A stretch of DNA of 64,000 bases from Marsupella aquatica (GCA_973895155.1 OZ316897.1:2235312-2299311), one strand, 5' to 3'. Positions 5,949-43,300 are shown, counted from the stretch's first letter. The notes: generated from the letters alone by a model not told the origin. Numbers and translations: made by a program.

Positions 5949-7889
5949 ATGTGGAGGCTCCAAATAGTGACAAAATAAATGATAACTACTCTATGTTTAA
6001 ATGTACGTCGTGATGCACTATGTACAATAATTCCTCAAAGGGCAAAATTAGATAGGTCTCCAATTGTTGTGTCATGAAAAACTACATAAATTCATTGTTT
6101 TACACGGCAGAAAGGTTAAGGCTCAATAAGACCACACACTATGGTGTTCACAAGTTTAGATACATTGCTCTTGAGGGTATAGAAATTGTCAAGTGGGAGA
6201 AATTGTGTTCAGCTATGGTGAAGAAGTTATGGAGAGACATGCATTGTTGTTTCCTCCCACTTGGTGAAGAAGACAAGATGGTGAGGGGGTTCTTTTGTCG
6301 TGGAGGGCTTGTCAACGAGCTACCCACAGACAGAATTCCTGATCGCAAATATGTGTAAATACTTTGTCAAGCATTTTAGTGACTATCCTGGCTTGATGGA
6401 GCACTTTGCTAACGACACACTCTCACACAAACAGTTCTGAGGTTAAAGCATGCACTGGTATATTCCATTGACTATTACTGTTGTTTGTCAATCATGTGTC
6501 CTTTTGCTTTGTCAAGTTTGATTCCTGTTTCACACTTTTTTATCTTGCATCACTCATGTTTGCCAAGCAAGCAAGTGTTGCACACTACACAATATCCCCA
6601 CATGCACATGGCTCGTGCCCAACGGGTATTTCTTTCTTTCTTTTTCCCAGCTTCATGTACCAACCGGGCACCAGCTTAATGTTTAATTTTTGCTAGCCCT
6701 GAACTATTGCATGTCTCCCTGTTACCACTCGGGCCCGCACTCGGGAGTTTGGCCGTCCTTTTGGTAACAAAAAATGTAGCTTGAATCGGTCCAATGCTTG
6801 ACCAAATTTTCCTCACAAATGGGGGCTGAAAGATGACCCTGGGTATGCAATTTAGCATACGTCATCACCCTTCAGTTCTAGTTGATGACCTACTTCAGTC
6901 TGTGTGACAAACAGATATGATGCACCACTCCTTGCACTTGGTTCTGATATTAATCAGTTGCATATGTAATTGAAAATTGTTCACATGAATGTCTAATGTT
7001 ACTAAGGTTCCATATCTACTTTCTTGACTTTGTTATCTATACACTCAGGGTATCACTATCTGGAGGCCTCCCCATCACCTGCCACGCTTTTTGGCCTTGA
7101 ACCCCCTAAAATGTAAGAAAACAAATATTTTTAAACCCCTATAAAGCTAAAATATTTTTAGAATGTTTCACTATTTTGATTAAAAAGACACTAATGTTCT
7201 TATAAGTCTCAAAATTGGATTTACAAGACCCTAATATTCTTCTCAAAAAATTCTTAAGTTTTCACTTAGAACCAATAAAATTACCTTATCTTTTGTCGCA
7301 CCTGGTGTGTCATTTTTGTGAAAATGAAATCCCCAAGGATAGATGTTTGATTCAAATGATACCAGTACTTCTTCTTTAACCTTTTTGCTTTATAACTTGA
7401 TAGAATACATTATCCCAGTCTTTCTACATACTATAACATCTTAAGAATCTCTCCCCTACATGTGTGAACACCTGGTTGCTTGTATCATTCAACATCCACT
7501 CTACGTACTCCCATGATATGCCATGTGTTATTAGCATGGCATGACATGAATGATTGTGTGTATATCATATCTAATAAAGATATTCCCTGGACCCATACTG
7601 TATGACTATTTCATGTTTTGTGTGTGGAGAGTGTTTTGTCTCAACGTGGCCTTAACTAGTTTATCTAACAGACAGGAGGATTCGAGGCAGGTTTGATAGT
7701 GAGGGCAGCCTGGTGGGAATTCAAAACTACAAGTGACTAGTCTGTGCCACTCAAGTTGTCTCCACACAACTGGTGGACACAACTGGTGGGAATGCTAAAC
7801 ATACAAGATGGATCTTGATCCCTTAGCAGCGCACACACCCAATGGACCTCCTGACAGTCATCTTATTATAAATGCGTCAACTGAAGTCT

Positions 7890-25649: not shown

Positions 25650-28600
25650 AAAAACTAAAAAACTAAAAACACATTGTGCTACCATGCTTGGCAAGAGCAT
25701 GGGATGTGAGATGACAACCATTTCTTATTTACAAAACTAAATTTTTTGCAGCAAAACTTATTTTTTAATTTTTTTAATTTTAATTTTTTTTAAATTAACA
25801 TTTATTCCACGTGAACCCCACGGATGAGAGTAACCAGCAGGCCCAAGGGCAATAGAAGCCAAAAAGGCCAAGAAGAGCAACATAAAAGCTAACAGGCGAG
25901 TGACCCTGAGAGTCAAGAAAAAGTGCCGCACAATCCAAAGCCTACAGTCTTCTTAGGAGCACAGACCAATCCTAGAGCAGTACCCTAATCAAAAACCTCC
26001 AACCGGGTTGCAGATCTCCCAGTCCACAAAACGGGAGAGATCCCAACAATCACCAGCCCACAGACAGTAGGCACCCCATCTCCATCTGTCAACAGAATCT
26101 ACAAGCCCCACAACCATCTAGCAAGCCTATGTAGCAAATCTAATTCCCCTTTGTGAGATCAATCGAGCTCTGATGTTCACTACCAACTCCTTGGCACGGA
26201 GAAGTCGGGCGTGTTTCTCGCTTGGAGGAGAAGATCTCCCAGCCGCCAATAACATGTCATTTACCTCAGATAAAACCAGTGATCGATCGAAGCTTCTTCT
26301 CTTCCTATGATCAAATGTCTGCTCATTTTTGCCCAGCCATATCGTCCATAAGACCTGAAATAGAATACAGGCCTTCAGAGTGCAAACACAATCCCTCCCC
26401 ACAGTGGAGTCTAGCAAGGGGAGAAGAGCCAAAATAGGCCAGTTGAACCATCCAGCCAGACAGTCATGTGTTACCTGCCAGCAACGCCGAGCATGTCTAC
26501 ACTCAAAAACGATATGAGGAATTGATTCCCAAGCATCATGACACAGCAGACATCGTCCGTTTCCTTTCCCAATTTTCAATGCCCACACTCCAGAGAACAG
26601 ACCCTGTGCAGTGATCCTCCATATAAAGGTCTTGGCACGTGTAGAGATATCAAGTGTCCACAAATTGAGCCATAACTTACTCCATTCTCTCTCTGTCCTA
26701 GTGCCTCCCCAAATCCTATTGAGTGGATTCATCTCCAAACCTTTTGGCCTAAGCAATTGATAGATCCTCCTATTATCAAGCCTAAACATTCTCAGCCTAT
26801 CTTCACTGTCAATCCAATGCCATGAAGCAGGTCTAGTAAGTCCAGTAGAAGCTCCAGCCAAACAAGTCCTAGCAGAAGAGATCACTCCAATCACCTCCAT
26901 ACAAAGGGTTATGAGTGCCTGATCAATTCCACGAATCCTGTCCAATCGTTCTTTCACCGAGATCCAACATCTCTTACTCCCTGACCATAGTGCATCAACT
27001 CTCTTAAGGCCAATACGGCCACAGACCTCAGCAACCGAGTTCAGACAGTCCTCCGGTAGAGATTGAAATCCTTCCAGACATTTGATCAGTTCAGAAAAGC
27101 CCCAGTGCCCTGGGATAGCTCCATCCTGAGGGCAGAAAACCAAGAATAACCTAAGTGGTTCCCAAGCCTTCCACAGACTCCTAGTATACCTCAATTTACC
27201 AAAATTTGCTGGTGAACAAAGTAAAATCCTACCTGTCATTGAATAACCATTTCTTCTAATATTCTTATAATTTTTCCACTTAGCCAAACAAAGATTAGCC
27301 CCAAAAAGCAGGGCCCACTCCGTATTAGGGTGGTCCAAAGCTTTAGTAAACCACTGACACAGCAAAGCATCCGAATGGACCTGAAAGTCCTTGAAGCCTA
27401 AACCGCCCATCACCTTGGGTCGAGTCAAGGTACCCCAGGCCACCAGCGGGACCTTCCTCCCACCAGCCGGATTATAGCCCCATAGGAAGTTACGACAAAG
27501 CGCTGTCATCTTTTTCCCCAGTGCTACAGCAGCAAGACTTATTTTATGCAACCAAATCCTAAATGCAACAACATTATTCACACAACAATTTTTTTTGGAC
27601 ATAATGACATTTTTCCTTCACAACATCTTTTGCATACCAATATGATTTTCACAAGGACATCTTTATCAATCAATGTGAGCTTTTGTGTATATAAGAACAT
27701 ATTTATACAATGATATTTTTTCTGCAATGCATTGGGGAATGAGCTCGCCTTTATTTATTTGCGTTGTCTTGACATCTTTGTCTTCCCTTGACATTTATCC
27801 CTTGCCCCGACATCATTGTCTTGCCTTCACATCTTTTCCTAGCCTCAAAATCTTTTCTCTCCTCAACATATATACTTTCCTCACCTTGACTTCGTCTTGA
27901 CATCTTTTCCTTGCCTCAACATCTTTTGTGCAACACTTGCCTGCATTTCTTTGCATCACTTCAACATCTTTGTGTTGCCTTGACATTTTTCCCTCTATTT
28001 GATATCTTTTGCTCCCTTCAACATTTTTCCTCACCTCAACATCTTTTCCTCACCCAGACATCTTCTACAAGTATTAAGGTCTTGCTTCCGGATTATGAGG
28101 AGGGTCTTGCAAGATTGACCAAAAATGTTCTATATGATGAGGTTGGTATATGCATGAGTGTGGTATTAATGTCTTTGACGTGTCCTCATATTTGTATTTA
28201 AGCAACTTACATTTTCATCTTTGTCATCTTTGTTGCCTCCCATGACATCTTCTCTTGCCTTGATATCTTTACCTTGCCTAAACACCCTTTTCTTATCTCA
28301 AAATCTTTCTCTCTCCACATTTTTTCTCTCCTCAACATCTGTTTGCTCACCTTAGCATTTTTGTCTCCTTGAAATGTTTTTCTCATCTCAACATCTTTTA
28401 TCTCCTCAACACCTTTTATCTCCTCAACACCATTTCTCTCCTCTCTTTGGAATCTATTTCAATCTCATCTCAACATCTTTTTCTCTACTCAACAACTTTT
28501 CCTCCATGACATCTTTTCTCTTCTCAAAATCTTTTTCTCTCGTTAACATCTCGCTCACCTCTATCTTTTCTCCCCTCAACATCTTTTGCTGACCTCAACA

Positions 28601-29298
28601 TTTATTCTCTCCTCGACATCTTTCGTGCAACACAATTGTCTTACAAAATTTGAAGTTTATCGTCTCAAAAAAGCCTTGGAAGCAAAACAAAGAGGGGGAG
28701 CGGCAAGGAGAAAAGGGAAGGGGGGCACATGGATGGGAAAAGAGGGAGGGAGAGGCTTCATCTTGCCCCTTCCATTCACGGTTAAGGGTGGAAAAGTGTC
28801 AAGCTTATTTTCTCACCTCAAAATCGTTTGCTCTAGTACTTTACATTTTTTCTTGCTCAACATTTTTTTTCTCTCCTTGGCACACTTTTTTCTCCTCAAC
28901 ATATTTTGCTCTCCTCGACATCTTTTGTTCACATTGACATATTTTCTCTCCTCAATTTTTTCCCCATCTCGACATCTATTTCTCTCCTTAACATCTTTTC
29001 TTTGAACCTGGACAAGTCATGTTTTTCTCCCGATTTTTTTCTCCTCGACATCTTTTTCTCTTTGACTTCTTTTATCATCTCAACATTGTTTGCTCATCTC
29101 GACATCTATTTCTCTTTTCGACTTCTTTTTCTCACCTCAACTTCTTTTTTCACCTTGACATCTTTTTCACCTTGACATATTTTTCTCACTTAAACATATT
29201 TTTCTCGCCTTGACATTTTTTTCACTTTGCCATTTTTTTTTCTTTGACATCTTTTATCAGTTCGACATCTTTCATGCAACGCACGGGCATCAGGCTAG
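25650..29298 (+). mobile_element. Helitron-like non-autonomous element (3' end at 29298; 5' end not defined) with a CTCAACATCTTTT-type minisatellite; hosts the LINE
   Basis: It ends TTCATGCAACGCACGGGCATCAGGCTAG|T, a typical plant Helitron 3' end. Degenerate ~18-bp (G/A)ACATCTTTT repeats cover 27600-29270. Confidence 0.6.
25765..27528 (-). mobile_element. 5'-truncated L1-clade LINE: C-terminal part of ORF2 with zf-RVT domain, 3' UTR and A-rich tail
   Basis: The open frame to 26127 contains NFLWG...VPLVAWGTLTRPKVMGGLGFKD and RAKTFIWR...CLLC...ESIPHIVFEC. AATAAA and an A-rich tail lie at ~25765-25806. TSD GCAGCAA(A/G)ACTTATTTT at 25748-25764 / 27529-27545. Confidence 0.92.
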
Positions 29299-30180
29299 TA
29301 ACATATATTAAACTACTCATAAGAGTATCATAACTAATCTTACACATGATTTCTCTCAATTACATTTGTGGGGTAGGACAAATAACAACTTAAAGAGCTA
29401 GTCCAAGTTTTTCGCGGGCCTTGGTGCCACGTTCAGAAAAACTTGGAGAATTCGATGGCCGAACGAAGGTAATGAGTGCCTGCTTTGCTTTGCTGTGTGA
29501 CTCAGACACAGGCGGATGGGGTACGAGTGCAATTGTGAGCTGCATTCCTTTCTTTGTGCTCAAGTACTTGTCTTGCTGCCTCGTTCAGTCACTTTTCTTG
29601 CAGGCCCTTCTTGGTTTTCATTTTCTATTCTCGCGGTTGGGGTCCGTTGTCAATTTGCCGCAGTCCCATCCCCGTTTGCAGTGACTTGCCTTGCAGCCCC
29701 GTATTGGTTTTCAATTAGTTTTCTTGCTGTCCTTTCCCCGTTTCCAATTACTTCTTCTCGATGAGTTTTGTTGGAGACTGACCTTGGAATCAATGAATTC
29801 TACGGGTCATCCTATTTTGAGCTTTCTAGCATCATCTTCGCCTGGGCCGGATCTTTGAACTGCCTACTACCTTGAATCGCTCTGCTCAGGGTCTCTATCA
29901 CAGACTAGGGTTCAATGGAGGTAGCTTCCTTTCGGAGAATAGGTAAACTATAATTGAATCCGAGAGACGTCGTTTGTCGTTGTGTCAAACTGGGCACACA
30001 ATTATCTTTACAGAGGAAGTATGAGCCCTGATAGATCTTGCATGCAGCGCAGGTCCTGTCATTGCGGCATTGGGATAACCCTTGATGAAATTCGTGATTT
30101 GCTTCAAGGCTAGTACTCGATGAGCATCTACTCTGGTAGGAGCTGGGGGCAATTGTTGAGGAAATGGTCCCAGTAAGAAA

Positions 30181-30673
30181 ATGGCTCGCGAGGCGATCAA
30201 AGGCTTGATTATCACCACGTGAGTGCCTTCCTGTCTCTGGAGTCCGACTGTGATTTGCTAATCCGCCGACTTTTTGTGATATATCAACTGTTAGTTTTAG
30301 GATGTAATAGTTGTACCAGGAGTGTGGGTGACAATGTCACTAGAAGATGGACAAGTTACGTGTTTGCCTCGCAATCTGCTGGCTGCCTCTTGAGTTTTGA
30401 GCTTTTGACACTAGTCAATGCGGGGAGCTGATCCTTGGTTCGGAATGTTGGAGACTAATTTGTTTCCTGATGCTTGTGACGTGGGACAGAGACGTACCAA
30501 TGGCGCAGTTTGTAATCAATCTAAATGCAAGTATGCCAAATGCACAAAAGTTCATCCTTGAAGTGCTCGATGACACCCACATCTTTGTGCTGGCGAACAT
30601 GGCTGAGACAATCCAATACAAAGTGCAGGAATTCAGAGAGTCGAATACCTATGAGAAGCCCCACGGAAGCTAA
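30181..30673 (+). CDS. TFB5: General transcription/DNA repair factor TFIIH subunit TFB5 (p8/TTD-A/GTF2H5), 73 aa, 2 exons
   Basis: Exons 30181-30218 and 30490-30673 (GTGAGT...CAG intron) give MAREAIKGLIITTDVPMAQFVINLNASMPNAQKFILEVLDDTHIFV...FRESNTYEKPHGS*. This matches the plant TFB5 pattern AIKG...D.PM.QF+.N.N.SMP..QKFI..VLD.TH.F. Confidence 0.93.
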
Positions 30674-30781
30674 ATCTTTCTTGTGGGTCAACTAGTCAAA
30701 ATATGAGCTTTGAAACGAAGTAGTGAGGTAACACGTATTGTCATGTGAAAGGCGAAAGCCAGGTGAAAGTCGTCTCTAGTA

Positions 30782-33700
30782 ATGGATCCTCCTTCCACAT
30801 CTGCTGCTGCGTCCGCTGGTGGTGGCGGTGGAGCCGAACAAGATACTGACGATGAAGTGAGTTCGAGTCGTCCACACCCTGGGTTTGAATAGGTTTGCAT
30901 TGGGTTGAATTGGTCTACATAGGGTGGTGATTGCAAGGGCTATGCGCACCGTGCTAAGTAAAGACACAAGTCTGAGTCCATTTTTGAGCTACTAAGATTA
31001 GCACTCTCATAATCTGCTTGTTTCGTTTTCAGTTGGACGGCTTCGATGACTTCACAATCGCTTCGTCCTGGGAGAAGTGAGTCTTACACAATGCAATTTC
31101 TTATGTCTTTATCCAAGATCAGATTGTGGCTGCTATCCAGCCCACTCAAGCTCAACAAATTCTTATGGCATGCATTTGACAGGGTGATAGCGACGGTTGA
31201 GGCGACTGCCCGAAATTGGCAGGAAGCAGGTTGTGCAGGCCTTCTGGTACGTGAACGGATTTTCCATTCTCACGAGGATGTGTTTTGCAGATGTCCATGT
31301 TCTTGATTACTGGCAATTTTGGCTTTTGTCTTTAGGCTGTCGTCGTGTGTTGATGATTGACTCTCTTTCCTTCTTTATTTCTATGCTACCTAGTTGCACC
31401 ATATTAGGTTGCCTTCCATTTTTTTTCTGCAAGGCCCACCGCTAGAGTCCTTGTTCTGTCCGCCCAACTGTGTCGTGTATTGGGAAATGAACACGGTATG
31501 TGATTTTCAAGTGCAAAAGATGATACATTAGCATCTTGGTAGAAATTAGGCGCCTTTGGAATACATATGGTTTTTGTTCAGGGTTTGAAAAGATTTTCCA
31601 ACTGGGCATACAGCAGAAATTCATAAACATGGGTATCCGAAGTTTGAAATTCTATCATACATAGCTTTTTGTATCGCTGACAAGCTTGTTATTGCATAGG
31701 CTGCGGGTGCAGTACCTGTTTCTGGGTCAAGAAGCCTGCACCGTGTTCACAAGGAGATCGCATTTGGCAAGAAACCATATGTAGTGATTTTCTTCTTTCA
31801 TATTGGCAGGGAATCAGGTATAGTACATTCTTTCCTGTGAGTGAGAGATTTCAATATGTGGACTACCTTGCTCTGGTGAAGTTGAAGAGAAAGTTTTGTG
31901 GTCAAATTCACGAGTTGAATCGAGCAGCTACAGTAGCTCATGTAATTCAAACCGGTTAATTCGAAAGTCTAGTATTGCAGTTGAGGACTACTGGGCGTTG
32001 ATTCTGATTCCTACTCTTTAAACGTAAGAAGGTTTGATTTAGGAAGGTTAAAATCGTTAAGGAGTGAGCAACATTTCTGCATAGGTCACAATAATTTCCT
32101 GTTCTGAATAAATTGCATTCTATGCGTTTTTGTCTTTTTCTGCCCAGACGAAGGGTTTCTCGGACGTCAATTTGGACTGCGTCTGAAACGATTTTCTTGT
32201 AATGTGTGTATTTGCAGAAGTTAGAGATGAATGGCCAATAGGCTTACATCATTTGCAGCTATGGTTTGGCGTGAGGGATTTCGTGGTGAGTGCACCTCTA
32301 TTTCCTTCAGACGTCATTCAGAGTAGGGAGATCAAATTTGTGTTACTAGAAATTTTGGGACATTTGCATCTTTTTCTTCTTCTTATATGAACTCTTTTAA
32401 CTGCCCTAGGAGACCTGTTCACAGTTTCACTGTCACGTTACAATGACAGATCGCAGGCAAATGTGGTAGTTTTTTTGTATCTTTAAATGTAAAGCACACC
32501 AACACGAGCAAGCTACAAGCTGAGCATATTTCATGCGTGTAAAAGCTATTTCTTTTCTCTTCCAGGTAGTTGTACCAGTCACGGACAGTGGAGTTATACT
32601 TGATGCGCCAGAGGCCACCACCCTACTGAGCACAGTTGCCATTGCACTGTCCTCTTGTGGCAGGTTCTTCCTTTCTGAAATGCTCAAGATTAGGAATCTA
32701 ATAAATTTTCTGGAATCGTTTTTGTGTGATTTGAGATCCGCTGGCTGCGTTTCCGTTGAGTCAAATGGTTATGTCAGATGATAACCATAAGAGTCATCCG
32801 ACTTAGTCTCTTCGCTGCTTCGAGTCACCAGGAATCTCTAGTTCGCGTAGCGAAGTCTGAGAGAGATGAATAAGATACTACTCTTACATTTTATGCTTAC
32901 TCTCTTACATGAAATGAATAGTCTTGCAGCAGTTCTAGCTTTCTTTGGAGGAGAGTTATTAGTTTTAGTAAATTATACTCAGTGGTATGTCTCGAGGAAA
33001 CCTCTAATCGACTGCTGACGAAGGAATTGTGCTTTGATTTCCAGTGACTGGCCTGCGTTTGTGCCAGTGCATGACCCTACTCGAAAAGCATACAAGGGTG
33101 TTCAGGGCACAAATAGTTCGTATTCTATCACTTTTGAAGCAGAACGCGTTGATCGCTGGGTTCCTGTACGATTCATGCACTTGGAGGGCCTCTATGAACT
33201 TTTTGTGTCAAAAGTGGTATGTACTCTCTCCCTCCCTCTTCCGGACCAACTTCCTTTTCGTCATTCGGATTTCGCACAAGTAGCCGTCTCTGTTGTTAGT
33301 AAGGTAGATGGGGAAAGATAGTATCAGTGACATTCAGCTAATCGAAAGAAAATTTGCAGGAGGCTGTTCTTAGTGTCATTTTGTCCAGTGAAGACTCATG
33401 TCTGATTGCAGTAATTGTTTTTCCGTGGCATTTGGGGTCTCCTCTAGCTTGTTTTTGGTGTTGTTGGAAATTCGAGCTCCATTCTGTTCCCAGACTTTGT
33501 TTTTTAGTCAACAACTATTGTCCATTTGTCTCCTTGAATACTTGGTTATTGGTAACAGCCTTTCCAAGCCTCTCTTGGCCAGGCTGACCTAAAGCTTCTG
33601 TTAGGTCCCTGTTACTCCCCATGAAGTAATTTCAAGATTCTGCATCCTTACCATCTTTGGGTTCCTTTCGGAATTTCTTCCCTGAAAGACTCCAGCCATT

Positions 33701-36700
33701 TTCTGATCTCGTATGTAGTGAGTACGAGAGGGTTGAAAGTACTTGGTGTCACTATTTGATTGGCAAGTTGCAGTTATCTTTGATGCATCCCCTTCCTGTC
33801 CCTGAAGGCTTTCACAGCAACAAGCTCTGCTGCAGTTCCTGCCCTGAAGGTGGAATTCACCATGCGGTTGACGTATCGAAGTCCTATGTTTGGGTACGAT
33901 TATCAAGATCGAGGCGGGGAAACTCCAGCTGCAGAGTCAAAAGCAGATTACGACGGCGAATCACCAAACGAACCTGCATGGGACGAAGATCTTCCCTGGG
34001 GAGAGTGGCATTCTGTTGATGACCCCATTAAGGGTACGGTAGCTTTTGTTGTCTCTGTCCTGCACTTATTCTGTCTCTGTGTCCGTGACGTGTGTTGTTA
34101 TGTGTAATTTGTTTTGTCTAAAGTTTTCTTTGGTGCGTGATATTCTTATGTAGCTTAGCTTCAATTTGCAGAACTTCTTCTCTCGTTGGAAAGATTCTGG
34201 ACGTGTCCCTCCAGAAACTTGCACAGAGGTTGCTACTCCGTTGCAATCTGTTGTGTTTGGCCATTTAGTGGTACCCGCCCCCGCCAAGGGTTTGACATTA
34301 TTGCCCGGCTGTTGTGATCCAGGTTTTGAATTGATTGCAATTTTCACCAGCAGGTTTGTGAGCAGTCCAGAAGAAATGGCAGAATTTGAAAATGCCTCCA
34401 CTTTTGCTGCCGACAAGTGGTCGCTTATTCCTGTATTTGTAGGGAAAAAGTAAGTGTTTCAGTTACTAGGCAATTGTTGCGACATTGTCCTTCGCACTAG
34501 AAAGGGCAAGTAAATAAGTGAAAGAATTCTGGGGCTCCAATTGCTGACTGGTACACAGAATGAATGAATGAAAAGTCTACGTGGACCCAAACGGGCCACA
34601 CGACGAGAACAGTACTAGGACTTCCTAGTCTGAAGAGTGAATCTTTTATTGGTAAATATGTGGATCTAAGAACAACAAGTTTCTAAATCGTGCTGCTTGT
34701 AGTTTTCAAGAGAGATCTTGTCCAGATCTTGTCCAGCAGGGACAGGCGACCAACTGTCCTCCTAATGTGACCAATCTGAACTAGTATCTTTGCCTTCACA
34801 GTACCGTTGCGACTGGATCAGTCTTATGGTGCTAGACATGTGGTTCACATCCCTCAGACTTACAGCATTGTTAATTCAATATAGACCAGTGTATCTTCAA
34901 CGCTGGGCCTATAATGATGTATTTTAGAGTTAGTTTTTCCGTTTGATGTCTTAATATAGTTTTCACCAAGCAGGGAGGACAGTCAGCGTGAAGAGGGATT
35001 CACTGGGCGTCTTGAAGCTCTGGTCAATGCATTTTTTGTAGCTGGAGAAGCGCAATTCATGGATGACTTCGCAAATGGTGCGTATAAGTCGGTTTCATAT
35101 ATTTTTTGGAGAAGTCTTTAGCCAAATGTACAAATTTTATACTTAAAGAGCGTTGTGGGGATTAGGAGTTAGCACCTGTATAATGCTGATCGTTATATTA
35201 TTGATTTGTGAAGTGGTGAAGCCGGATATGGATCTGTTGCTTGAAGCATTTACAGTACCACCACCAAGTGTCCTTGAGCGAGTTCTTAAAGATCTCTTCT
35301 ACGCAGGTATTTGTGGCTCTTTGCTGTCTCACATCTTGTTTCTAATTTATTAGACCGTTTCTCTCATGGAGCAGAAAGGTAGGAATGATGGAGCGTATCA
35401 CTGCATTTAATAAACAAGATGTTATTTGCAGCGGTGATACCGTCCGGTGATGGGTTCTCTTTCAAAACTTTTGGTATATCTGTGAAGGGAGCACCACGTG
35501 ATTCCCTCTTTGGTCGATTTTCCCTTCAAGCGTTGCGTTTCGGAAGTTGTAACATACGTGGTATGTATATCTCAATTTGATGATAACCATTTGGCTACTC
35601 TTTTTGTGAAATTATCATCACGTCTATTGATGTGCTGGACCTCATGTACGGAAAGACTGAGTTATGGACAGTGGTTTTGACAAATCATTGTTCTTTTCTT
35701 GTCCAGCTATCTCGGACCTCTGGTTAGAATTTCTGCGAGAGGTTCGCTGGTGTTGGGATGAGTGCCAGCCTTTGCCAAGGGTCTCACCTGATGAGCCTCC
35801 CGACCTTTCAGCTTGTTTGTTACATCAAAAATTACAATTGGTACTATAATCTGTCTCAATAATCTCGTGTATGCTTCTGCAAACGTTTTGATGCTCTAAT
35901 AGTGATCCGAATCACATGAGAATGTGTGAGTTTCGCTATGTCAAAATTGAAGGGGTCTTCGTAATAGAGCTGTTGCTCCTAAGTTTGCAACAGTATGGGG
36001 CACATTTTTAGTGTTCCGAGAATCTTACGCAATAGATCCGCACTCAAAAACCTTTCTCATTTGATCTCTCACACAGCCCTCAATCTAATCAACTTAATTT
36101 CTGGTGAGAGGAAGTTCTAAGCGTTCTGATTCAATCTAGAATAGTTATGCTGAAGCGGGAGTATGAATGTGTCTTGACAGTAAGGAAAACATCTTTCACA
36201 GTGAACATGATTACTGTAAAAAACTTCCACCAGTGACATATGATGGGGTCGGCTCGGTGATAGTTGAGTGGATACGATGCATGTAAAATTTGCAAGCATG
36301 AATTGCTGCGTCTCATCTAAGTATCTTGTGCCAATCGTCAGCTGGCAATGTGCATAAAAATCAAGGCAGAGGAGGCAGTCAAGAAATCAGCTTCTGATCA
36401 GCAGGACCCTTATGGAATGGAGAGCCAAAATAAGGCAACCACGAGTGACGATAAGATTCATGATCAGGTTTGAGTCTTGGCTCTGTTTATCGAGTAATTC
36501 CTTTGATTCATAGTGTTTAGCCACTATGTAAGTTTACAACGTAGTCTGAATTCAAGTGAGTTTATGGTTTGCTAAATATTTTCTGTTCTGTCTTCTTGTT
36601 TTTCTGCTGAATTTGCGTGTAGGATATAAACGATCCCACTGAGTTGGTACCCGAGGCACCGGATTCAGGCCCAGCCGAAGCTTTCGAAGAAACCTTACCA

Positions 36701-39700
36701 AGTTTTCCATCTCAAAGGTGTTCCGTTTACCCACTAGTGTCGGGGAATGTTACACTTTACCCCAGGCATCTACTATCTTCATCCCGCAATAAGCCCGGCC
36801 GTTGATGCAGTAGGATGATAGAAACATTAAGATTGTGACACATCATCTAGATGGGGTGGTTTCAGTGATTTGGAGTGAATTAAGTAAAATCTTGGGGTGA
36901 ATTGCGCGTCCCCCTTACTTTTTGCGCTTTGATATTTAACCAGAACTAAGACAAGCAAAGTGGTCCATGCTGTCAAACACATTGATGTTGGATTCAAGTG
37001 GAGTGATTTATATGTCATTTCTAGGATAGCGAGCAAAATTGGCGTTCGTAGTTAACTTAATGTTGCATAGACAAGAGTCTCCAAGTATTATTTTGAGAAT
37101 TCTTAATTTTCGTGTCTGGTGCAGCTCTGTAGATGAAATGGAAAGCTTGTTCAGTCCACCTCCTCAGGAGACGAAGCCAAGCCCAAAGGAAGTCCCTAAA
37201 TCTTTGCCGGAGCAAGTCCCTACGTTTGTGCAAAGTACTCCTGTTACTGAAGTCTGGCATTCCAGTGATGATGAAGAGCCATGGGAACCATTGGAACGAG
37301 TTGATATTCCGGAAGCCAAAGTGCGAAAAGAGAGAAGAGGCTCTGCTGGGCTCGTCAAAAATCTGATGTTACTGAAAGTGGAGGAGCCAATGCATGCTCC
37401 TCTAGTGCAGGTTCAAAACATATACCCTCCAAGTTGGAAATGCTTTGTTGATCTAGCTATATTAAATGAGCCCTCTTAGTACCCCCCGCCGCCCCCCCGC
37501 CCCTCCCCCCCTTTTTAATGTGGATGTCGGAACGTGGCTGACAATCTTCAATCCCTTATTTCCAAGAATCTTGTGGGAATAGTTGTGATTGATCAGCTGG
37601 GTCGTTCCAGTTTGTCCAAGGTTTCTTCACGAACCTGTGGATGGATGGGAATAGTTTGAATTCTTTTTGACTGAGATGCTTTCTTGCAACGATCAGAGAA
37701 CACCCGTGATGACTGAGGACATGCTACTGGAGCGAGAACAAGCAATTGCTTCATTAAGCCGATCCCCTTCTGTAAGTCTTATTTAGCCAGGACCTATCGG
37801 CAGTTATGTCATTTGTTCATTCTCTTTGTTCCATGCCTTCTCACAACTGAGAAGCAAGATTAGATGAAATCGCTCAAGAAGGAAAGAATTAAGGAAACGG
37901 TAGGCTATCGATTTGTGAGCCTTACAATAGCATTTGCTTTACAACAAATTCGAGTGTTTTGAATTCATATCTTTGAGTGGGTTGTTGAAATATCTATGCA
38001 GTGTCCAAGACTGAATGAGTAGAGGAATTGAGATGGAAATTTAAGGATATGACTAAAGACGGTGTCGTGGCAAAAACACTGCTCATGTACTGAAGAGGTC
38101 ATGTGTTGATTACTGTTTATCTTGCAGGAGAGAGTGGCACGTATTCGTCTTCAAACTGACATTCTGGCCTCAGGTTGGGATTATACATAATCATTGCCAA
38201 TCGAGTTGTTCGTTGACTTCAGAAAGGAAGTCTATATCTCATGTTGTGTGACCTCAATATGGAATGTGGCTTATCATGCCCTTGACGTGCTGTTAACAGA
38301 TATGGGAGCATTCAAAGCCGCTAATCCAGGAGCAGTTCTTGAGGACTTTGTTCGGTGGCATTCTCCTCGTGATTGGTTAGAAGAGCGTGCCGATGGAGAC
38401 GGGGAGATCTCAGGCAGCAGAAATGTTGAGTCTAGTGAAAGAACCTGGCCTCCTCGAGGACGACTTTCAAATCGTATGTCACAACCAGACAATGTTTGGA
38501 ATCAGACTTGGGATCAGAGTGCTCCAGAAGCTGCAGCAGAACAAAAGCTTCTCTTTGATTATAAGCGAGAGGGTGAAAAGGTACTCAATACTGTCTGACG
38601 TGTTCATCACTACTTAAAATTGTTACCAGGGATAACCCATCATAGAAGATTACTATAATGTTGTATGTGAGCTCTTATACTTTCAAGTATGTCATTTGAC
38701 AGGTGATACATTACTTGGACACGTTACGACCACAGCAGTTACTTGCGCAAATGCTTTGCACGGCCTTTATGGCTTCTGCTGATGCACTGCGAAGGACAAA
38801 GTCGGGCGACATGAAACGGTTACTTTCTGAGCTGGAAGAGTTGTATTCAACAATGAGCGTTGTTCTTGAGCCGTTGTCGAAATTTGAGAGGGCCGGTAAG
38901 TTTAGGCGTTGCAAAGCTGTCATTTCAGTGGCAGTGTGTTTGCTCAACTTAATTCTTAAGCATGACCAGATGAGCGTCAGTGCCAAGAGTCATTAGGTTC
39001 AGATTCTGCTCCATTGTTGAAAAGCTGGATTTTGAAGACTTTATTTGTCATAGTTGAACTCTAATGATCCATTTGCTTTTGGTGGGTTGGTAGATGTACC
39101 TCCGAAGGCGGAAGTTGATTCTTGGCGTTCAGATCTTCTACAGCTGTGCACGGTTTTTGGAAAAGTTGAAACAGATGTCTTTGTGGCCGCTTCCCTTTTC
39201 CAAAAACTCAAGATGACTCCATCGTTGATGACGGACTTGTTCACTAGTTTTCTGGATGATGGAGAACGATTAACAAACGCTCGTGTACATAGTCAAAGCC
39301 CGTGGGAGGTTCGTTTATCCTGTTCCTCCGTTGGTCACCCAGGATCTTGTGGACGGTCTGATTTTTATAGATACCACTTCTGAACATCGTTCTCATTGAA
39401 CCTTGCATAGGATTGTCTTCTTTCTCTTCTTCACTTTTTTTTATATGCCTTGTGGTAACTCCTGGATATCCATGTAAGTAGCACTAGTGTTGGTCACCAA
39501 TTATGTGGTGGTAGAATGGGAGGCTGCACACTGTAATACAATGTCCATCTTCAAGAGGTCTGACTCTCTGATGCGGTTTAATTTTCTTTCTCTACAGGGA
39601 GGCTCAAATGAAAGAGAACTAGTTGCTGAGCTTTTTCCTGTTGCAAGCACTAGGCCGTCTTCGAGCAAGACCCAGAAGATGGGAAATTATTTGAATGGAA

Positions 39701-39873
39701 GTGAACCCGATGTTCGAGAAGTGAAGTTCCACTGCTATGAAGAAGACCTCCGCCAGAGATGGAATAGGAGGAAGGAAAGAAAAGCTTATAGTAAGACGAT
39801 TTCACATCGTATGTATGCCTGTGGAACATCAGATGATTTACAAATTGCCCTCTCTGTTGTTACCAGAGACTAG
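30782..39873 (+). CDS. RAB3GAP1: Rab3 GTPase-activating protein catalytic subunit, 22 coding exons
   Basis: I assembled a continuous GT-AG spliced frame: MDPPST...DTDDE/LDGFDDFTIASSWEK/.../LDAPEATTLLSTVAIALSSCG/SDWPAFVPVHDP.../LWLEFLREVRWCWDECQPLP...DLSACLLHQKLQL/.../PVMTEDML/SDMGAFKAANPGAVLEDFVRWHSPRDW...LLFDYKREGEKVIHYL...HRMYACGTSDDLQIALSVVTRD*. Confidence 0.93.
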
Positions 39874-40393: not shown

Positions 40394-43300
40394 TGTTAAG
40401 ATATCATAATTAAGTTACTAGGGTTACTTACCTAACGCTAGTTAGGAACCTTGTACCCATTACTCTCATATATAAACACCCCAAGGAGAAGTTGGGGATG
40501 CAGTTGCAGATTGTATCGAACACGTTATCAGCACGCATTGACTCCCCGACATTGAGCAAGGCTGGCTATGGCAAATTGAATCTGAAGAAAATTGAGAAAA
40601 GAGGACAGAACTGAAAACGAAAGAGGCCGACTCAGGCAAAGGCGAATCCGTGAGCGAGCAGAAGCCAGGGTCGCACAGAAAGAAGAATCGAGAAAGACTG
40701 AAAAGGAGAAGCCAACAGAAGCACAAAGGAATCAACACAAGGACAGACCCGATCACAAAGGCTCAAAATCGAAAGCAATCAGACACGCACAAGGGAATAA
40801 ACAGACTGGAGGTCGACCTCGATCTCCCTAGCCAAAAGCTATCGAAAAGGAAGGCGAAAAGAAGCAGCCATTGACTGAGTGATTTGAAATTTCTATAAGG
40901 TTTCAATTACTTTGACAGACAGCAACGTTCGATCAAGAAACAACCTCGAACATTATATCAGGCGAATCAGTTCAAAGAAGATAGAAAATCGAAAAGGAGC
41001 AGAAAGCTGAGAACGAAGATAAGGACATCGCGGATCCATAAGGACGAAAGACGGGGACCTTCCGTGGATGAGGAGGAGCCCACCTGCCACAGTAGTCATG
41101 AGGCGGGGTCAAGATTGTTCGATGGAAGTAAAGGCGCAGATTCTGAGAGAGAACGGTAGAGCAGAGAAAGGCGAAAATTGATAAGAAGAAAATAGATGAG
41201 GACAGGTTCAAAAGAAGTAGAAACGAGAATAAAAGGAAGAATTGATAAGGAACGCAACAGTGATTCAAAAGAAAGGCGCATGCAGCCAAACGAAGACAGC
41301 ATGGGATCAAAAAAGATAATCGAAAATTAAGATCAAAGCAGTAGACGGAGAACAAGGAGAAGAAGAAACTGAACAAAGACAGGCAGCATAGAGACGAACA
41401 CTCACTACAATCAGTGTGCGAACGATGACGAAGAACAGACAGAAAAGACTATCTACTTTTCACGGACGAAGAACAGACAGAAAAGACTATCTACTTTTCA
41501 CTGGGGCAACATGATACTGTAGGCACAATATAGAAACATGAAGTTCACAAAATATTATGAATTTATAGCTCACATGTCACTAGCCTAGAGCCATCAGGAG
41601 TTACTATTGAAGAACTCGAAGATGCTACCCCCGGGAACCCTGCCATCACCCCCAACCACTGAGACAAACTTCGGAACGCCTTCCAGCAGCAGAGGAGGCC
41701 AACGGGGCGGCTTCGTCGCAACGGTAAAGGACTGGCCTTCAGAGGAGGAAGACAGTTCGGAGGCGGAAGATCTACCTACCTTAGGGGGAGAGGCAGAGGC
41801 TGCGGACAAGGAAGACCAAGCTTCACCCACACCCGTGGAGGAACGGGAAGACCAGGAAGACCAGCCCAATGGGGCAGTTCTTCCCGATAGTACTCAGGAA
41901 GACCCGCTATGGAATGCTTTCGATGCGGCACCAAGGGCCACCCACAGAAACTTGCCGCATACCCGCACATCTCGTAGAATTGTACCAATAGAATAGAAAT
42001 AATAGAACTCAGGAGGCATATCATGGCACTTTTCTAGAGCAAGACGAGCATCTAGAAAACTATACCCATGATGAGACCATCCCTGAGACACATATGATTA
42101 CACATCAACAGGATTTATTACCTTTGGACGACATTAGAACGTGCATTGTAGATAGCGACAGGTCCCACACTATATTAAAGTGCAAGGACTATTTCACTCA
42201 CATTAGTACTCCATCCCATAGAAACATGACTACTATCGTGGGGAGCAACCAGATAGAAGAAGGTAACAGACCCACCACAATCATGTTACCTCAGGGCACT
42301 CCTATCTATATTAAATCCGCTATATACGCACCTAATGCCACAAGAAACTTGATTAGTTTCAAGGACATTAGAGATAACGGATTCCATATCCACACTAGCA
42401 CAGATAAAAACCAGGAAGTAATTCATATTTTAAAGAATACTTCCTATGGAATGCAAATAAAAGAAACACTTTTCACGTATCCGTTGGGTTTCTATGTCAC
42501 ACAATTGAATGCTTTTCATTCCACCACGCATGAGATGTCACTATATGACCTTTGGCATACGAGGCTTGGACACCCTGGCATGACCATGTTTCAAAAGATG
42601 AAAATAGTAACCCACAGAATACCACAAAACGCACGCCCAACGAACCATTGATAGTCAGTCTTGCATGGCATGTTCTCAAGGAAAGTTAATCCTTCCGTCT
42701 CCAAGACCATCCATGAAATGCCTAGATTCTTGGAATGAGTGCATGCAGACGTATGTGGCCCTATTGAACCACCAAGCAAACCATTTTGATTTTTCCTAGT
42801 CATTATTGACGCATCCTCGAAATGGTCGCAAGTTTCATTGCTTTCCACACGAAACAAGGTTTTTCCAAGATTTTTAGCACACATCCTCAAGCTAAAAGCC
42901 CAATTCCCCGAAAATCCTATCAAGTCGATTAGGGCTGATAATGCAGGCAAATTCACTTCGTAAACATTCAAAGACTTTTGCATGGCGCGCTATAGGGTTA
43001 GACACTCAATAGGGGTACCTCACGTCCATTACTAAAATGGCATCGCTAAATCTATCATTAAGAGAATACAGATGATACCAAGACCCATGCTTATGCAGAT
43101 GTAGTTACCCACAATTGCCTGAGGTCACGTTGTACTACATACAACAACTTTACTTAAATATCGCCCATCGGCGTACAACGACCAAACTCCACACCACCTA
43201 GCCTTTGGAGTAGATCCTGACTTATCACATGTCAGGACTTTTGTTTGCCAAGTAATAGTCCCCATAATAGGACCCAAACGTACCAAGATGGGACCTCAAA

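What the first reader, a model, noticed from the sequence alone, without database searches (positions are those of the whole stretch)
29400..39873. Candidate bicistronic TFB5 - RAB3GAP1 transcript
Seen: an intact 73-aa TFB5 CDS ends at 30673 and the Rab3GAP ATG is at 30782 on the same strand, 108 nt later. The spacer has no AATAAA or U-rich 3' UTR and leaves little room for a terminator plus promoter. It contains three in-frame TGA stops, so read-through fusion is excluded, and two tiny uORFs (MSFETK*, M*). Probable 5'-UTR exons (donors ~29469 and ~29943; acceptors ~29889 and ~30052) lie upstream of TFB5 only. Known: the Chlamydomonas TFB5 homolog REX1-S is the first cistron of a bicistronic mRNA with a different partner (REX1-B), and plant CDC26-TTM3 is a conserved bicistron with a small first ORF. 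Inference: one mRNA yields both a TFIIH/NER subunit and a Rab3GAP subunit by leaky scanning or reinitiation. I do not recall this pairing being described.
Basis: partly seen in the sequence, partly recalled or inferred. Interest (0 to 1): 0.88.

Follow-up and report, generated by a model that had tools for sequence, protein, structure and literature searches.

The report
TFB5–Rab3GAP two-gene transcript in liverworts
In this liverwort genome the tiny DNA-repair/transcription gene TFB5 ends 108 bases before the start of a large Rab3GAP gene, and a related species makes spliced RNA carrying both reading frames, so this is probably a rare two-protein messenger RNA in a land plant, though single-molecule proof is still missing.

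Summary
An intact two-exon, 73-aa TFB5 gene (ATG 30181, stop 30671-30673) lies 108 nt upstream of the ATG (30782) of an intact Rab3GAP catalytic-subunit gene of about 20 exons, which ends at 39873.

New evidence: an 1100-nt RNA-assembly contig from a related liverwort (L001, SRR6371231) carries, in order:
- a spliced 5' leader;
- the spliced TFB5 ORF;
- a homologous 109-nt spacer;
- Rab3GAP exons 1-7, spliced.

TFB5 exon 2, the spacer and Rab3GAP exon 1 therefore form one exon.

The linkage is derived. Four Calypogeia fissa TFB5 loci and the Riccia sorocarpa locus lack it, and Calypogeia TFB5 keeps its own 3' flank with AATAAA. Both ORFs are under purifying selection (TFB5 dN/dS 0.07).

A contig does not prove single molecules, and no RNA run exists for this species. 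An internal Rab3GAP start site or a minor read-through RNA remains possible.

Leaky scanning is unlikely: the TFB5 AUG has a strong context and 9 AUGs (8 in L001) precede the Rab3GAP AUG. Reinitiation would be needed.

I read this as a new variant of a known kind. TFB5 is already a first cistron in green algae and a bicistron member in Drosophila, each with a different partner.

The parts
29416..29534 (+). 5'-UTR exon A of the shared transcript (minimum extent; the true start may lie further upstream)
   Evidence: Aligns to L001 1-149 at 78% ungapped identity with many indels. Donor GTGAGC at 29535.
29535..30052 (+). 5'-UTR intron (518 nt, GT..AG)
   Evidence: Absent from the sister-species mRNA contig L001: its positions 149/150 join window 29534 to 30053.
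30053..30180 (+). 5'-UTR exon B. It holds a uORF start conserved with L001 (30120) and a window-specific uAUG at 30164 that overlaps the TFB5 start out of frame.
   Evidence: L001 150-272 at 80% identity. AUG list. In organism B, 30165 T>A removes the 30164 AUG.
30181..30218 (+). TFB5 coding exon 1 (ATG in context aaaATGg)
   Evidence: Same intron position as in Calypogeia and Riccia TFB5.
30219..30489 (+). TFB5 intron (271 nt, GT..AG)
   Evidence: Spliced out in L001. Splice sites.
30490..30673 (+). TFB5 coding exon 2, including the TAA stop
   Evidence: Pfam PF06331 E 4.8e-18. 97% identical to P0001. dN/dS 0.07 against L001.
30674..30781 (+). 108-nt inter-ORF spacer, exonic. It has conserved blocks at ~30695-30733 and 30761-30780, and mini-uORFs at 30703-30723 and 30743-30748.
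   Evidence: Contiguous with both ORFs in L001 (495-603, 109 nt, 80-84% identity). Three in-frame TGA codons. No significant RNA structure.
30782..30856 (+). Rab3GAP coding exon 1 (ATG in context gtaATGg), part of the same exon as TFB5 exon 2 and the spacer
30782..39873 (+). Rab3GAP catalytic-subunit (plant Rab3GAPL-type) gene, about 20 exons, apparently intact
   Evidence: tblastn of Riccia P0062 covers aa 42-1036 over 31033-39870. L001 exons 2-7 map to 31033-33070.
38284..38616 (+). Rab3-GTPase_cat domain exon, with the arginine finger LSNRM at 38464-38478
   Evidence: Pfam PF13890 E 3.3e-35. Motif position. The LSxRM consensus comes from bioRxiv 10.1101/2023.07.03.547386.

Best explanation
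TFB5 and Rab3GAP form one transcription unit in this liverwort lineage.

Proposed course of events:
1. Transcription starts at or upstream of ~29416.
2. A 518-nt leader intron and the 271-nt TFB5 intron are removed.
3. The mature mRNA carries the 73-codon TFB5 ORF, a 108-nt unstructured spacer, and the roughly 1000-codon Rab3GAP ORF.
4. TFB5 is translated by ordinary scanning past short leader uORFs.
5. Rab3GAP is translated at a low level by ribosomes that resume scanning after terminating at the TFB5 stop (reinitiation), not by leaky scanning.

The arrangement arose after the split from the Calypogeia lineage. A rearrangement replaced the TFB5 3' UTR and poly(A) region with the Rab3GAP start.

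Shown here: the gene anatomy, the exonic spacer and spliced two-ORF RNA contig in a sister species, the lineage-specific origin, and purifying selection on both ORFs.

Inferred: single-molecule co-transcription in this species, the absence of an internal promoter, and the reinitiation mechanism. A likely sensitivity of the mRNA to nonsense-mediated decay is also inferred, because about 20 exon junctions lie downstream of the TFB5 stop.
For: 1. L001, a Logan contig of SRR6371231, is fully spliced. It contains the TFB5 ORF (273-494), a 109-nt spacer and a Rab3GAP ORF from 604 with six Rab3GAP intron positions removed. It maps colinearly to window 29416-33070, and TFB5 exon 2, the spacer and Rab3GAP exon 1 form one exon.
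2. That TFB5 protein occurs on only this one contig in the index, and the contig does not break at the spacer.
3. The spacer is 108 nt here and 109 nt in the sister species, despite dS of about 0.16-0.47 between them. It has few indels compared with the leader.
4. Calypogeia TFB5 loci share a conserved 3' flank of about 200 nt, with AATAAA about 175 nt past the stop in two of three aligned loci. Homology to the window stops at 30665, so the window gene lacks that terminator region. There is no AATAAA before 32107.
5. The locus sits in TE-rich, gene-poor DNA, so a 108-nt gap does not reflect general compactness.
6. TFB5 has dN/dS 0.07 and the Rab3GAP N-terminus 0.39, so both are functional.
7. 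Precedent: TFB5 shares a bicistronic mRNA in chlorophytes, where it is the upstream ORF (REX1-S/REX1-B, PMC7896298), and in Drosophila (Tfb5-Dmp18, PMC9514664).
Against: - A de Bruijn contig across two genes does not show that any single molecule carries both ORFs. An internal Rab3GAP start site in TFB5 exon 2, its intron or the spacer would leave no mark in a contig.
- No RNA run exists for this species.
- The TFB5 AUG is in a strong context, and 9 AUGs (window; 8 in L001) lie between it and the Rab3GAP AUG. Translation of ORF 2 would need reinitiation after a 73-codon ORF.
- In Arabidopsis bicistronic read-through RNAs this was rarely seen, and such RNAs are NMD targets (PMC9768141).
- In green algae the mechanism is leaky scanning, with features opposite to those found here (PMC11291117).
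- Spacer divergence (16-20%) is within the neutral range, so sequence constraint is not demonstrated.
Confidence: 0.55

Rival explanations
1. Overlapping but separate transcription units. Rab3GAP has its own start site inside the TFB5 gene (intron, exon 2 or spacer) and is translated from a monocistronic mRNA. TFB5 mRNAs start at ~29416 and either end at a non-canonical poly(A) site inside early Rab3GAP sequence or run on as a by-product. The two-ORF contig arises from overlap of the two RNA populations or from the run-on form.
For: - Contigs cannot show starts or ends (tool note).
- The many AUGs and the strong TFB5 Kozak context make ORF 2 translation from the long form inefficient.
- In Arabidopsis most second genes of read-through loci have their own start sites (PMC9768141).
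- A conserved A/T-rich block (CAAAATATGAGC, ~30697-30708) about 75 nt upstream of the Rab3GAP ATG could be a weak TATA-like element (inference only).
Against: - It requires a promoter embedded in a strongly constrained coding exon or a 271-nt intron, and a poly(A) site with no AATAAA.
- The L001 contig passes from the TFB5 leader through six Rab3GAP intron positions without a break, so intron-retained or early-terminated forms were not abundant enough to split the graph.
- The ancestral TFB5 3' flank is gone.
Confidence: 0.3
2. Occasional read-through transcript of two ordinary neighbouring genes, as at the 271 Arabidopsis loci. It would be a minor, NMD-degraded species of no functional importance.
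For: Such RNAs are documented in plants and would also assemble into a two-ORF contig (PMC9768141).
Against: - A 108-nt gap leaves too little room for a complete terminator plus promoter.
- The gap length is conserved between species with dS of about 0.16-0.47.
- There is no intergenic splicing: the spacer is retained.
- No separate TFB5 contig was found in the run.
- The arrangement replaced the ancestral TFB5 3' flank.
Confidence: 0.1
3. TFB5 here is a decaying relic that now serves only as a long regulatory uORF of Rab3GAP, while a functional TFB5 is encoded elsewhere in the genome.
For: Its position matches that of a uORF. This window carries an extra out-of-frame uAUG (30164) that overlaps the TFB5 start.
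Against: - TFB5 dN/dS is 0.07 against the sister species. The ORF, its intron position and the Pfam match are fully intact.
- The 30164 uAUG is absent in organism B and in L001.
Confidence: 0.05

Closest known systems
Chlamydomonas / chlorophyte REX1 locus (REX1-S = TFB5 homologue, followed by REX1-B) (PMC7896298; PMC11291117)
   Same: TFB5 is the small upstream ORF of a nuclear two-ORF mRNA within the green lineage. The collinear pair is conserved between species.
   Different: - The partner differs: REX1-B, a DNA-repair protein, versus Rab3GAP, a membrane-traffic and autophagy GAP.
- The algal inter-ORF is very short (14 bp in Auxenochlorella).
- Algal bicistrons work by leaky scanning, with tunable or weak ORF 1 contexts and few AUGs. 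Here ORF 1 has a strong context and 8-9 AUGs intervene.
- The liverwort pair is of independent and recent origin, being absent in Calypogeia and Riccia.
Drosophila Tfb5 (Dmp8)-Dmp18 bicistronic transcript (PMC9514664 and the reference it cites)
   Same: TFB5 shares one mRNA with an unrelated protein.
   Different: It is an animal lineage, the partner is a ZNHIT1-type chromatin-remodelling factor, and the origin is independent.
Arabidopsis CDC26-TTM3 bicistron (cited in PMC9768141 and PMC11291117)
   Same: A land-plant nuclear mRNA with a small conserved first ORF and a larger second ORF.
   Different: The genes differ. CDC26-TTM3 is widely conserved in plants and has been verified experimentally. 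Here the pair is restricted to one liverwort clade and lacks single-molecule and translation evidence.
Arabidopsis polycistronic read-through transcripts (PMC9768141)
   Same: One RNA spans two same-strand genes. The first stop codon is followed by many exon junctions, which predicts NMD sensitivity.
   Different: Those loci have separate promoters and terminators, often show intergenic splicing, and produce minor RNA species. Here the gap is 108 nt, it is retained as exon sequence, and the ancestral 3' flank of gene 1 is missing.
Plant Rab3GAPL (bioRxiv 10.1101/2023.07.03.547386)
   Same: The second ORF is the liverwort orthologue. It has the Rab3-GTPase_cat domain, the LSxRM arginine finger and the conserved N-terminal DDFT(I/L)ASSWE motif.
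   Different: The parts of that paper read here say nothing about an upstream TFB5 ORF. In the other liverworts checked the two genes are unlinked.

Membership tests
Eukaryotic nuclear bicistronic mRNA | Two non-overlapping, conserved protein-coding ORFs on the same strand, separated by a short spacer | tested here: met
   TFB5 30181-30673 and Rab3GAP 30782-39873, with a 108-nt spacer. Pfam hits for both. Both under purifying selection.
Eukaryotic nuclear bicistronic mRNA | Mature, spliced RNA in which the spacer is exonic and both ORFs are present | tested here: inconclusive
   Met at contig level in a sister species (L001). A contig does not prove single molecules, covers only the first 165 codons of ORF 2, and is not from this species. 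No RNA run holds this locus.
Eukaryotic nuclear bicistronic mRNA | No independent start site for ORF 2 and no poly(A) site for ORF 1 between the ORFs | not testable with these tools
   Only indirect evidence: no AATAAA before 32107 and loss of the Calypogeia-type 3' flank. Needs CAGE, 3'-end sequencing or long reads.
Eukaryotic nuclear bicistronic mRNA | Both ORFs translated from the shared mRNA | not testable with these tools
   No ribosome-profiling or proteome data are available.
Eukaryotic nuclear bicistronic mRNA | Collinearity conserved in related species | tested here: met
   Present in the L001 species and in organism B DNA. Absent in Calypogeia fissa (4 loci) and Riccia sorocarpa, where the two genes lie on different chromosomes. 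The pair is therefore clade-specific.
Leaky-scanning bicistron of the green-algal type | Weak or tunable Kozak-like context at ORF 1, and few or no AUGs between the ORF 1 start and the ORF 2 start | tested here: not met
   The TFB5 start is aaaATGg (purine at -3, G at +4). Nine further ATGs precede the Rab3GAP ATG in the window and eight in L001. Criteria taken from PMC11291117.
TFB5/TTDA/p8 subunit of TFIIH (PF06331) | Significant match to the Tfb5 profile over nearly its full length, in a protein of about 70 aa | tested here: met
   Exon 2 alone scores 65.3 bits (cut-off 23.5), E 4.8e-18, covering profile positions 13-66 of 67. Closest proteins are liverwort TFB5.
Rab3GAP catalytic subunit / plant Rab3GAPL (PF13890) | Rab3-GTPase_cat domain with the LSxRM arginine finger | tested here: met
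   121.5 bits (cut-off 26.1), E 3.3e-35. LSNRM at 38464-38478. Aligns along the full length of Riccia Rab3GAP.
Arabidopsis-type read-through transcript | Intergenic splicing, or separate complete genes with their own terminator and promoter | tested here: not met
   The spacer is retained unspliced in L001. A 108-nt gap with no AATAAA. Whether each gene has its own promoter or terminator could not be tested directly.

The most novel reading that the evidence does not exclude
An obligate bicistronic mRNA in a land plant. It would have arisen by a rearrangement that removed the TFB5 terminator. Its roughly 1000-codon Rab3GAP ORF would be translated only by reinitiation after a full 73-codon ORF that has a strong start context and 8-9 intervening AUGs. 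That mechanism is the opposite of the leaky scanning shown for green-algal bicistrons. It would tie the output of an autophagy and secretion regulator to translation of a TFIIH/NER subunit.
Probability: 0.3. Interest if true: 0.75.

Novelty: new variant of a known kind. Interest (0 to 1): 0.58.

Why it matters
Genuine nuclear bicistronic mRNAs are very rare in land plants. This would be a young one whose origin can be traced:
- the state before the rearrangement is visible in Calypogeia;
- the state after it is visible in at least two diverged species.

It would also be a third, independent case of the tiny TFIIH subunit TFB5 sharing an mRNA with another gene, after green algae and Drosophila. 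That suggests very small genes are prone to capture by, or of, their neighbours.

Its AUG-rich ORF 1 with a strong start context makes it a natural test case for long-ORF reinitiation, as opposed to an internal promoter, in plants. For annotation it is a warning: 73-aa first cistrons are easily lost when pipelines keep only the longest ORF per transcript.

Tried and rejected
- **RNA evidence for this species.** The look-up of sequencing runs returned only four DNA-type runs, all holding intron sequence. Read laying on them gave DNA contigs only, with no joints, starts or ends.
- **Rab3GAP N-terminal fragments from other liverwort transcriptomes.** The search returned only seed-plant fragments.
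- **Rab3GAP downstream of TFB5 in other liverworts.** Looked in Calypogeia (L002, L003, L005, L006) and Riccia (L004), and for TFB5 upstream of Riccia Rab3GAP (L007). None was found.
- **Read-through fusion protein.** Rejected because of TAA plus three in-frame TGA codons, and because the frame relation is not conserved in L001.
- **IRES-like structure in the spacer.** Rejected as unsupported: fold z-scores are +1.0 and -1.4.
- **Leaky scanning.** Rejected on start context and AUG count.
- **Homology of the spacer to the Calypogeia TFB5 3' UTR.** None found.
- **Other TFB5 transcripts.** L010-L012 look monocistronic, L009 and L013 are uninformative, and the second ORF of L008 has no Pfam hit.
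- The 73-aa TFB5 and the Rab3GAP protein of this window are spliced models. They were searched exon by exon by reference only. Inside local scripts, the two TFB5 CDS exons were concatenated once for an identity count.
- **Consequence of that limit.** No exact-protein look-up for RNA contigs of this very species could be made.
Full report
**1. What is in the sequence**

The window is nuclear DNA of a liverwort. The closest TFB5 proteins come from Calypogeia fissa (91%) and Riccia sorocarpa (78%), plus one 97% match from an RNA assembly.

On the + strand there is a two-exon TFB5 gene:
- The ATG is at 30181, in the context aaaATGg.
- Exon 1 ends at 30218.
- A GT..AG intron spans 30219-30489.
- Exon 2 is 30490-30673 and ends with TAA.

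Exon 2 alone matches Pfam Tfb5 at E 4.8e-18.

Rab3GAP begins 108 nt after the TFB5 stop, at ATG 30782 (MDPPSTSAAASAGGGGGAEQDTDDE). The Riccia orthologue P0062 (1036 aa) aligns from residue 42 to its last residue over 31033-39870, with no sign of disruption. The exon at 38284-38616 matches Rab3-GTPase_cat at E 3.3e-35. It contains the arginine finger LSNRM, which fits the LSxRM consensus reported for plant Rab3GAPL.

No AATAAA occurs before 32107.

DNA contigs from four runs, including a second organism 1-2% diverged, cover the junction. The adjacency is therefore real.

**2. RNA evidence from a related species**

The 97% TFB5 match (P0001) lies on a single 1100-nt Logan contig of run SRR6371231 (L001). 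The contig holds, in order:
- 272 nt of leader;
- an uninterrupted 73-codon TFB5 ORF (273-494);
- a 109-nt spacer;
- an open Rab3GAP reading frame from 604 to the end of the contig.

It maps to the window as a spliced transcript:

| L001 | Window |
|---|---|
| 1-149 | 29416-29534 |
| 150-310 | 30053-30218 |
| 311-~681 | 30490-30856 |

Rab3GAP exons then follow at about 31033, 31183, 31699, 32217, 32565 and 33042.

TFB5 exon 2, the spacer and Rab3GAP exon 1 are thus one exon in mature RNA. Eight intron positions are removed, while the spacer is retained.

There is one leader intron, 29535-30052. The acceptor at 30052 is right. The donors at 29469 and 29943 and the extra exon are not supported.

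No RNA run holds this locus for the window species itself. The four runs found are DNA, and laying them gave no joints, starts or ends.

**3. Evolution**

The four Calypogeia fissa TFB5 loci (L002, L003, L005, L006) and the Riccia locus (L004) have no Rab3GAP within 6-8 kb downstream. Riccia Rab3GAP lies on a different chromosome, with no TFB5 upstream.

Over TFB5 exon 2, nucleotide identities are:

| Pair | Identity |
|---|---|
| window vs L001 | 91.7% |
| window vs Calypogeia | 85-87% |
| L001 vs Calypogeia | 81-84% |

The window species and the L001 species are therefore sisters relative to Calypogeia, and the linkage is a derived character of their clade.

Three Calypogeia loci (L002, L003, L005) share a conserved TFB5 3' flank of about 200 nt. 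Two of them have AATAAA about 175 nt past the stop. Homology with the window ends at 30665, just before the stop codon. The rearrangement therefore removed the old TFB5 3' UTR and terminator region and put the Rab3GAP start in its place.

Divergence between the window and L001:

| ORF | dS | dN | dN/dS |
|---|---|---|---|
| TFB5 | 0.47 | 0.033 | 0.07 |
| Rab3GAP N-terminus | 0.16 | 0.06 | 0.39 |

Both ORFs have been kept functional in this arrangement.

The spacer keeps its length (108 versus 109 nt) and has two well-conserved blocks. Its overall identity (80-84%) is within the neutral range, so I do not claim sequence constraint.

The locus is surrounded by transposon remnants and simple repeats. 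The tiny gap is therefore not a by-product of a compact genome.

**4. How it probably works**

The simplest reading is one transcription unit producing a two-ORF mRNA.

It does not fit here:
- The TFB5 AUG has a purine at -3 and G at +4 in both species.
- Nine further AUGs in the window, and eight in L001, lie before the Rab3GAP AUG.

The spacer shows no unusual RNA structure (z +1.0 and -1.4), so an IRES-like element is unsupported.

If Rab3GAP is made from this RNA, it must be by reinitiation after the 73-codon ORF. Reinitiation is expected to be inefficient. In Arabidopsis bicistronic read-through RNAs the second ORFs were rarely translated, and those RNAs were NMD targets (PMC9768141). Here about 20 exon junctions follow the TFB5 stop, so NMD sensitivity is predicted. 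This is an inference.

The main rival is therefore an internal Rab3GAP start site inside the TFB5 gene or the spacer. A contig cannot reveal one.

My estimates:
- 0.55 for the shared-mRNA model, with both proteins made from it;
- 0.30 for overlapping separate units;
- 0.10 for incidental read-through;
- 0.05 for a relic TFB5 acting only as a uORF. The dN/dS of 0.07 argues against this last one.

**5. Comparison with what is known**

TFB5 is already known as a cistron of two-ORF mRNAs in two other lineages:
- In chlorophytes it is REX1-S, paired with REX1-B. The pair is conserved in Chlamydomonas, Chromochloris, Coccomyxa and Volvox (PMC7896298).
- In Drosophila it is paired with Dmp18 (PMC9514664).

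Arabidopsis CDC26-TTM3 is the land-plant precedent for a small first cistron.

No paper in the library pairs TFB5 with Rab3GAP.

The present case shares the architecture but differs in three ways:
- The partner is different.
- The origin is independent and recent.
- Its features fail the test for the algal leaky-scanning type.

I class it as a new variant of a known kind.

**6. Limits**

The spliced protein models of this window were never joined for any search, fold or look-up. They were searched exon by exon by reference. As a result, the exact-protein look-up for RNA contigs of this very species could not be done. The species behind SRR6371231 could not be named.

Noticed in passing
L004:6001-7100 (Riccia sorocarpa CM100799.1): In Riccia the TFB5 stop (6693-6695) is followed 203 nt later, on the same strand, by the ATG (6899) of a 364-aa dual-specificity phosphatase (DSPc) gene. 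There is no AATAAA between them. This may be a second, independent tight TFB5 tandem or bicistron with yet another partner. The DSPc gene is not linked to TFB5 in Calypogeia or in the window.
   Followed up: partly
L008:1-1108 (Logan SRR21676477): A transcript-like contig from an unidentified green-lineage organism carries an intronless or spliced TFB5 ORF (51-269). A second ORF (678-1106+) lies 408 nt downstream, open to the contig end. It is rich in Arg and Ser at its start and ends ...WHDLRKGRITAS, and has no Pfam hit. It could be another TFB5-first two-ORF RNA, possibly REX1-like.
   Followed up: partly
window:30164-30208: A window-specific upstream AUG in strong context (gaaATGg) opens a 14-codon ORF that overlaps the TFB5 start codon out of frame. 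It is absent in the sister-species mRNA. In the close relative (organism B) it is destroyed by 30165 T>A. It would reduce TFB5 initiation in this genome.
   Followed up: partly
window:30120-30176 and L001:214-252: A short leader uORF whose start and first residues (MSI.SG.S.GQ) are shared between the two species. It ends a few bases (window) to about 20 nt (L001) upstream of the TFB5 AUG. TFB5 itself may depend on leaky scanning or reinitiation.
   Followed up: no
window:26127-27602 (-): A 491-aa ORF resembling the C-terminal part of a non-LTR retrotransposon ORF2 (zinc-binding reverse-transcriptase tail). It is followed by about 1.7 kb of T/C-rich simple repeats (27600-29300) running up to the TFB5 leader.
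   Followed up: no
window:42094-44833 (+): ORF fragments typical of a Ty1/copia retrotransposon (GAG-pre-integrase and RVT_2-like motifs) lie about 2 kb downstream of the Rab3GAP stop. Low-complexity K/E/R-rich ORFs at 40400-42000 precede them.
   Followed up: no
window:31033-31077: The Rab3GAP N-terminal motif reads LDGFDDFTIASSWEK. A paper on plant Rab3GAPL describes an ATG8-interacting motif (WTIV) whose position I did not resolve. Whether FTIA here corresponds to it was not tested.
   Followed up: no
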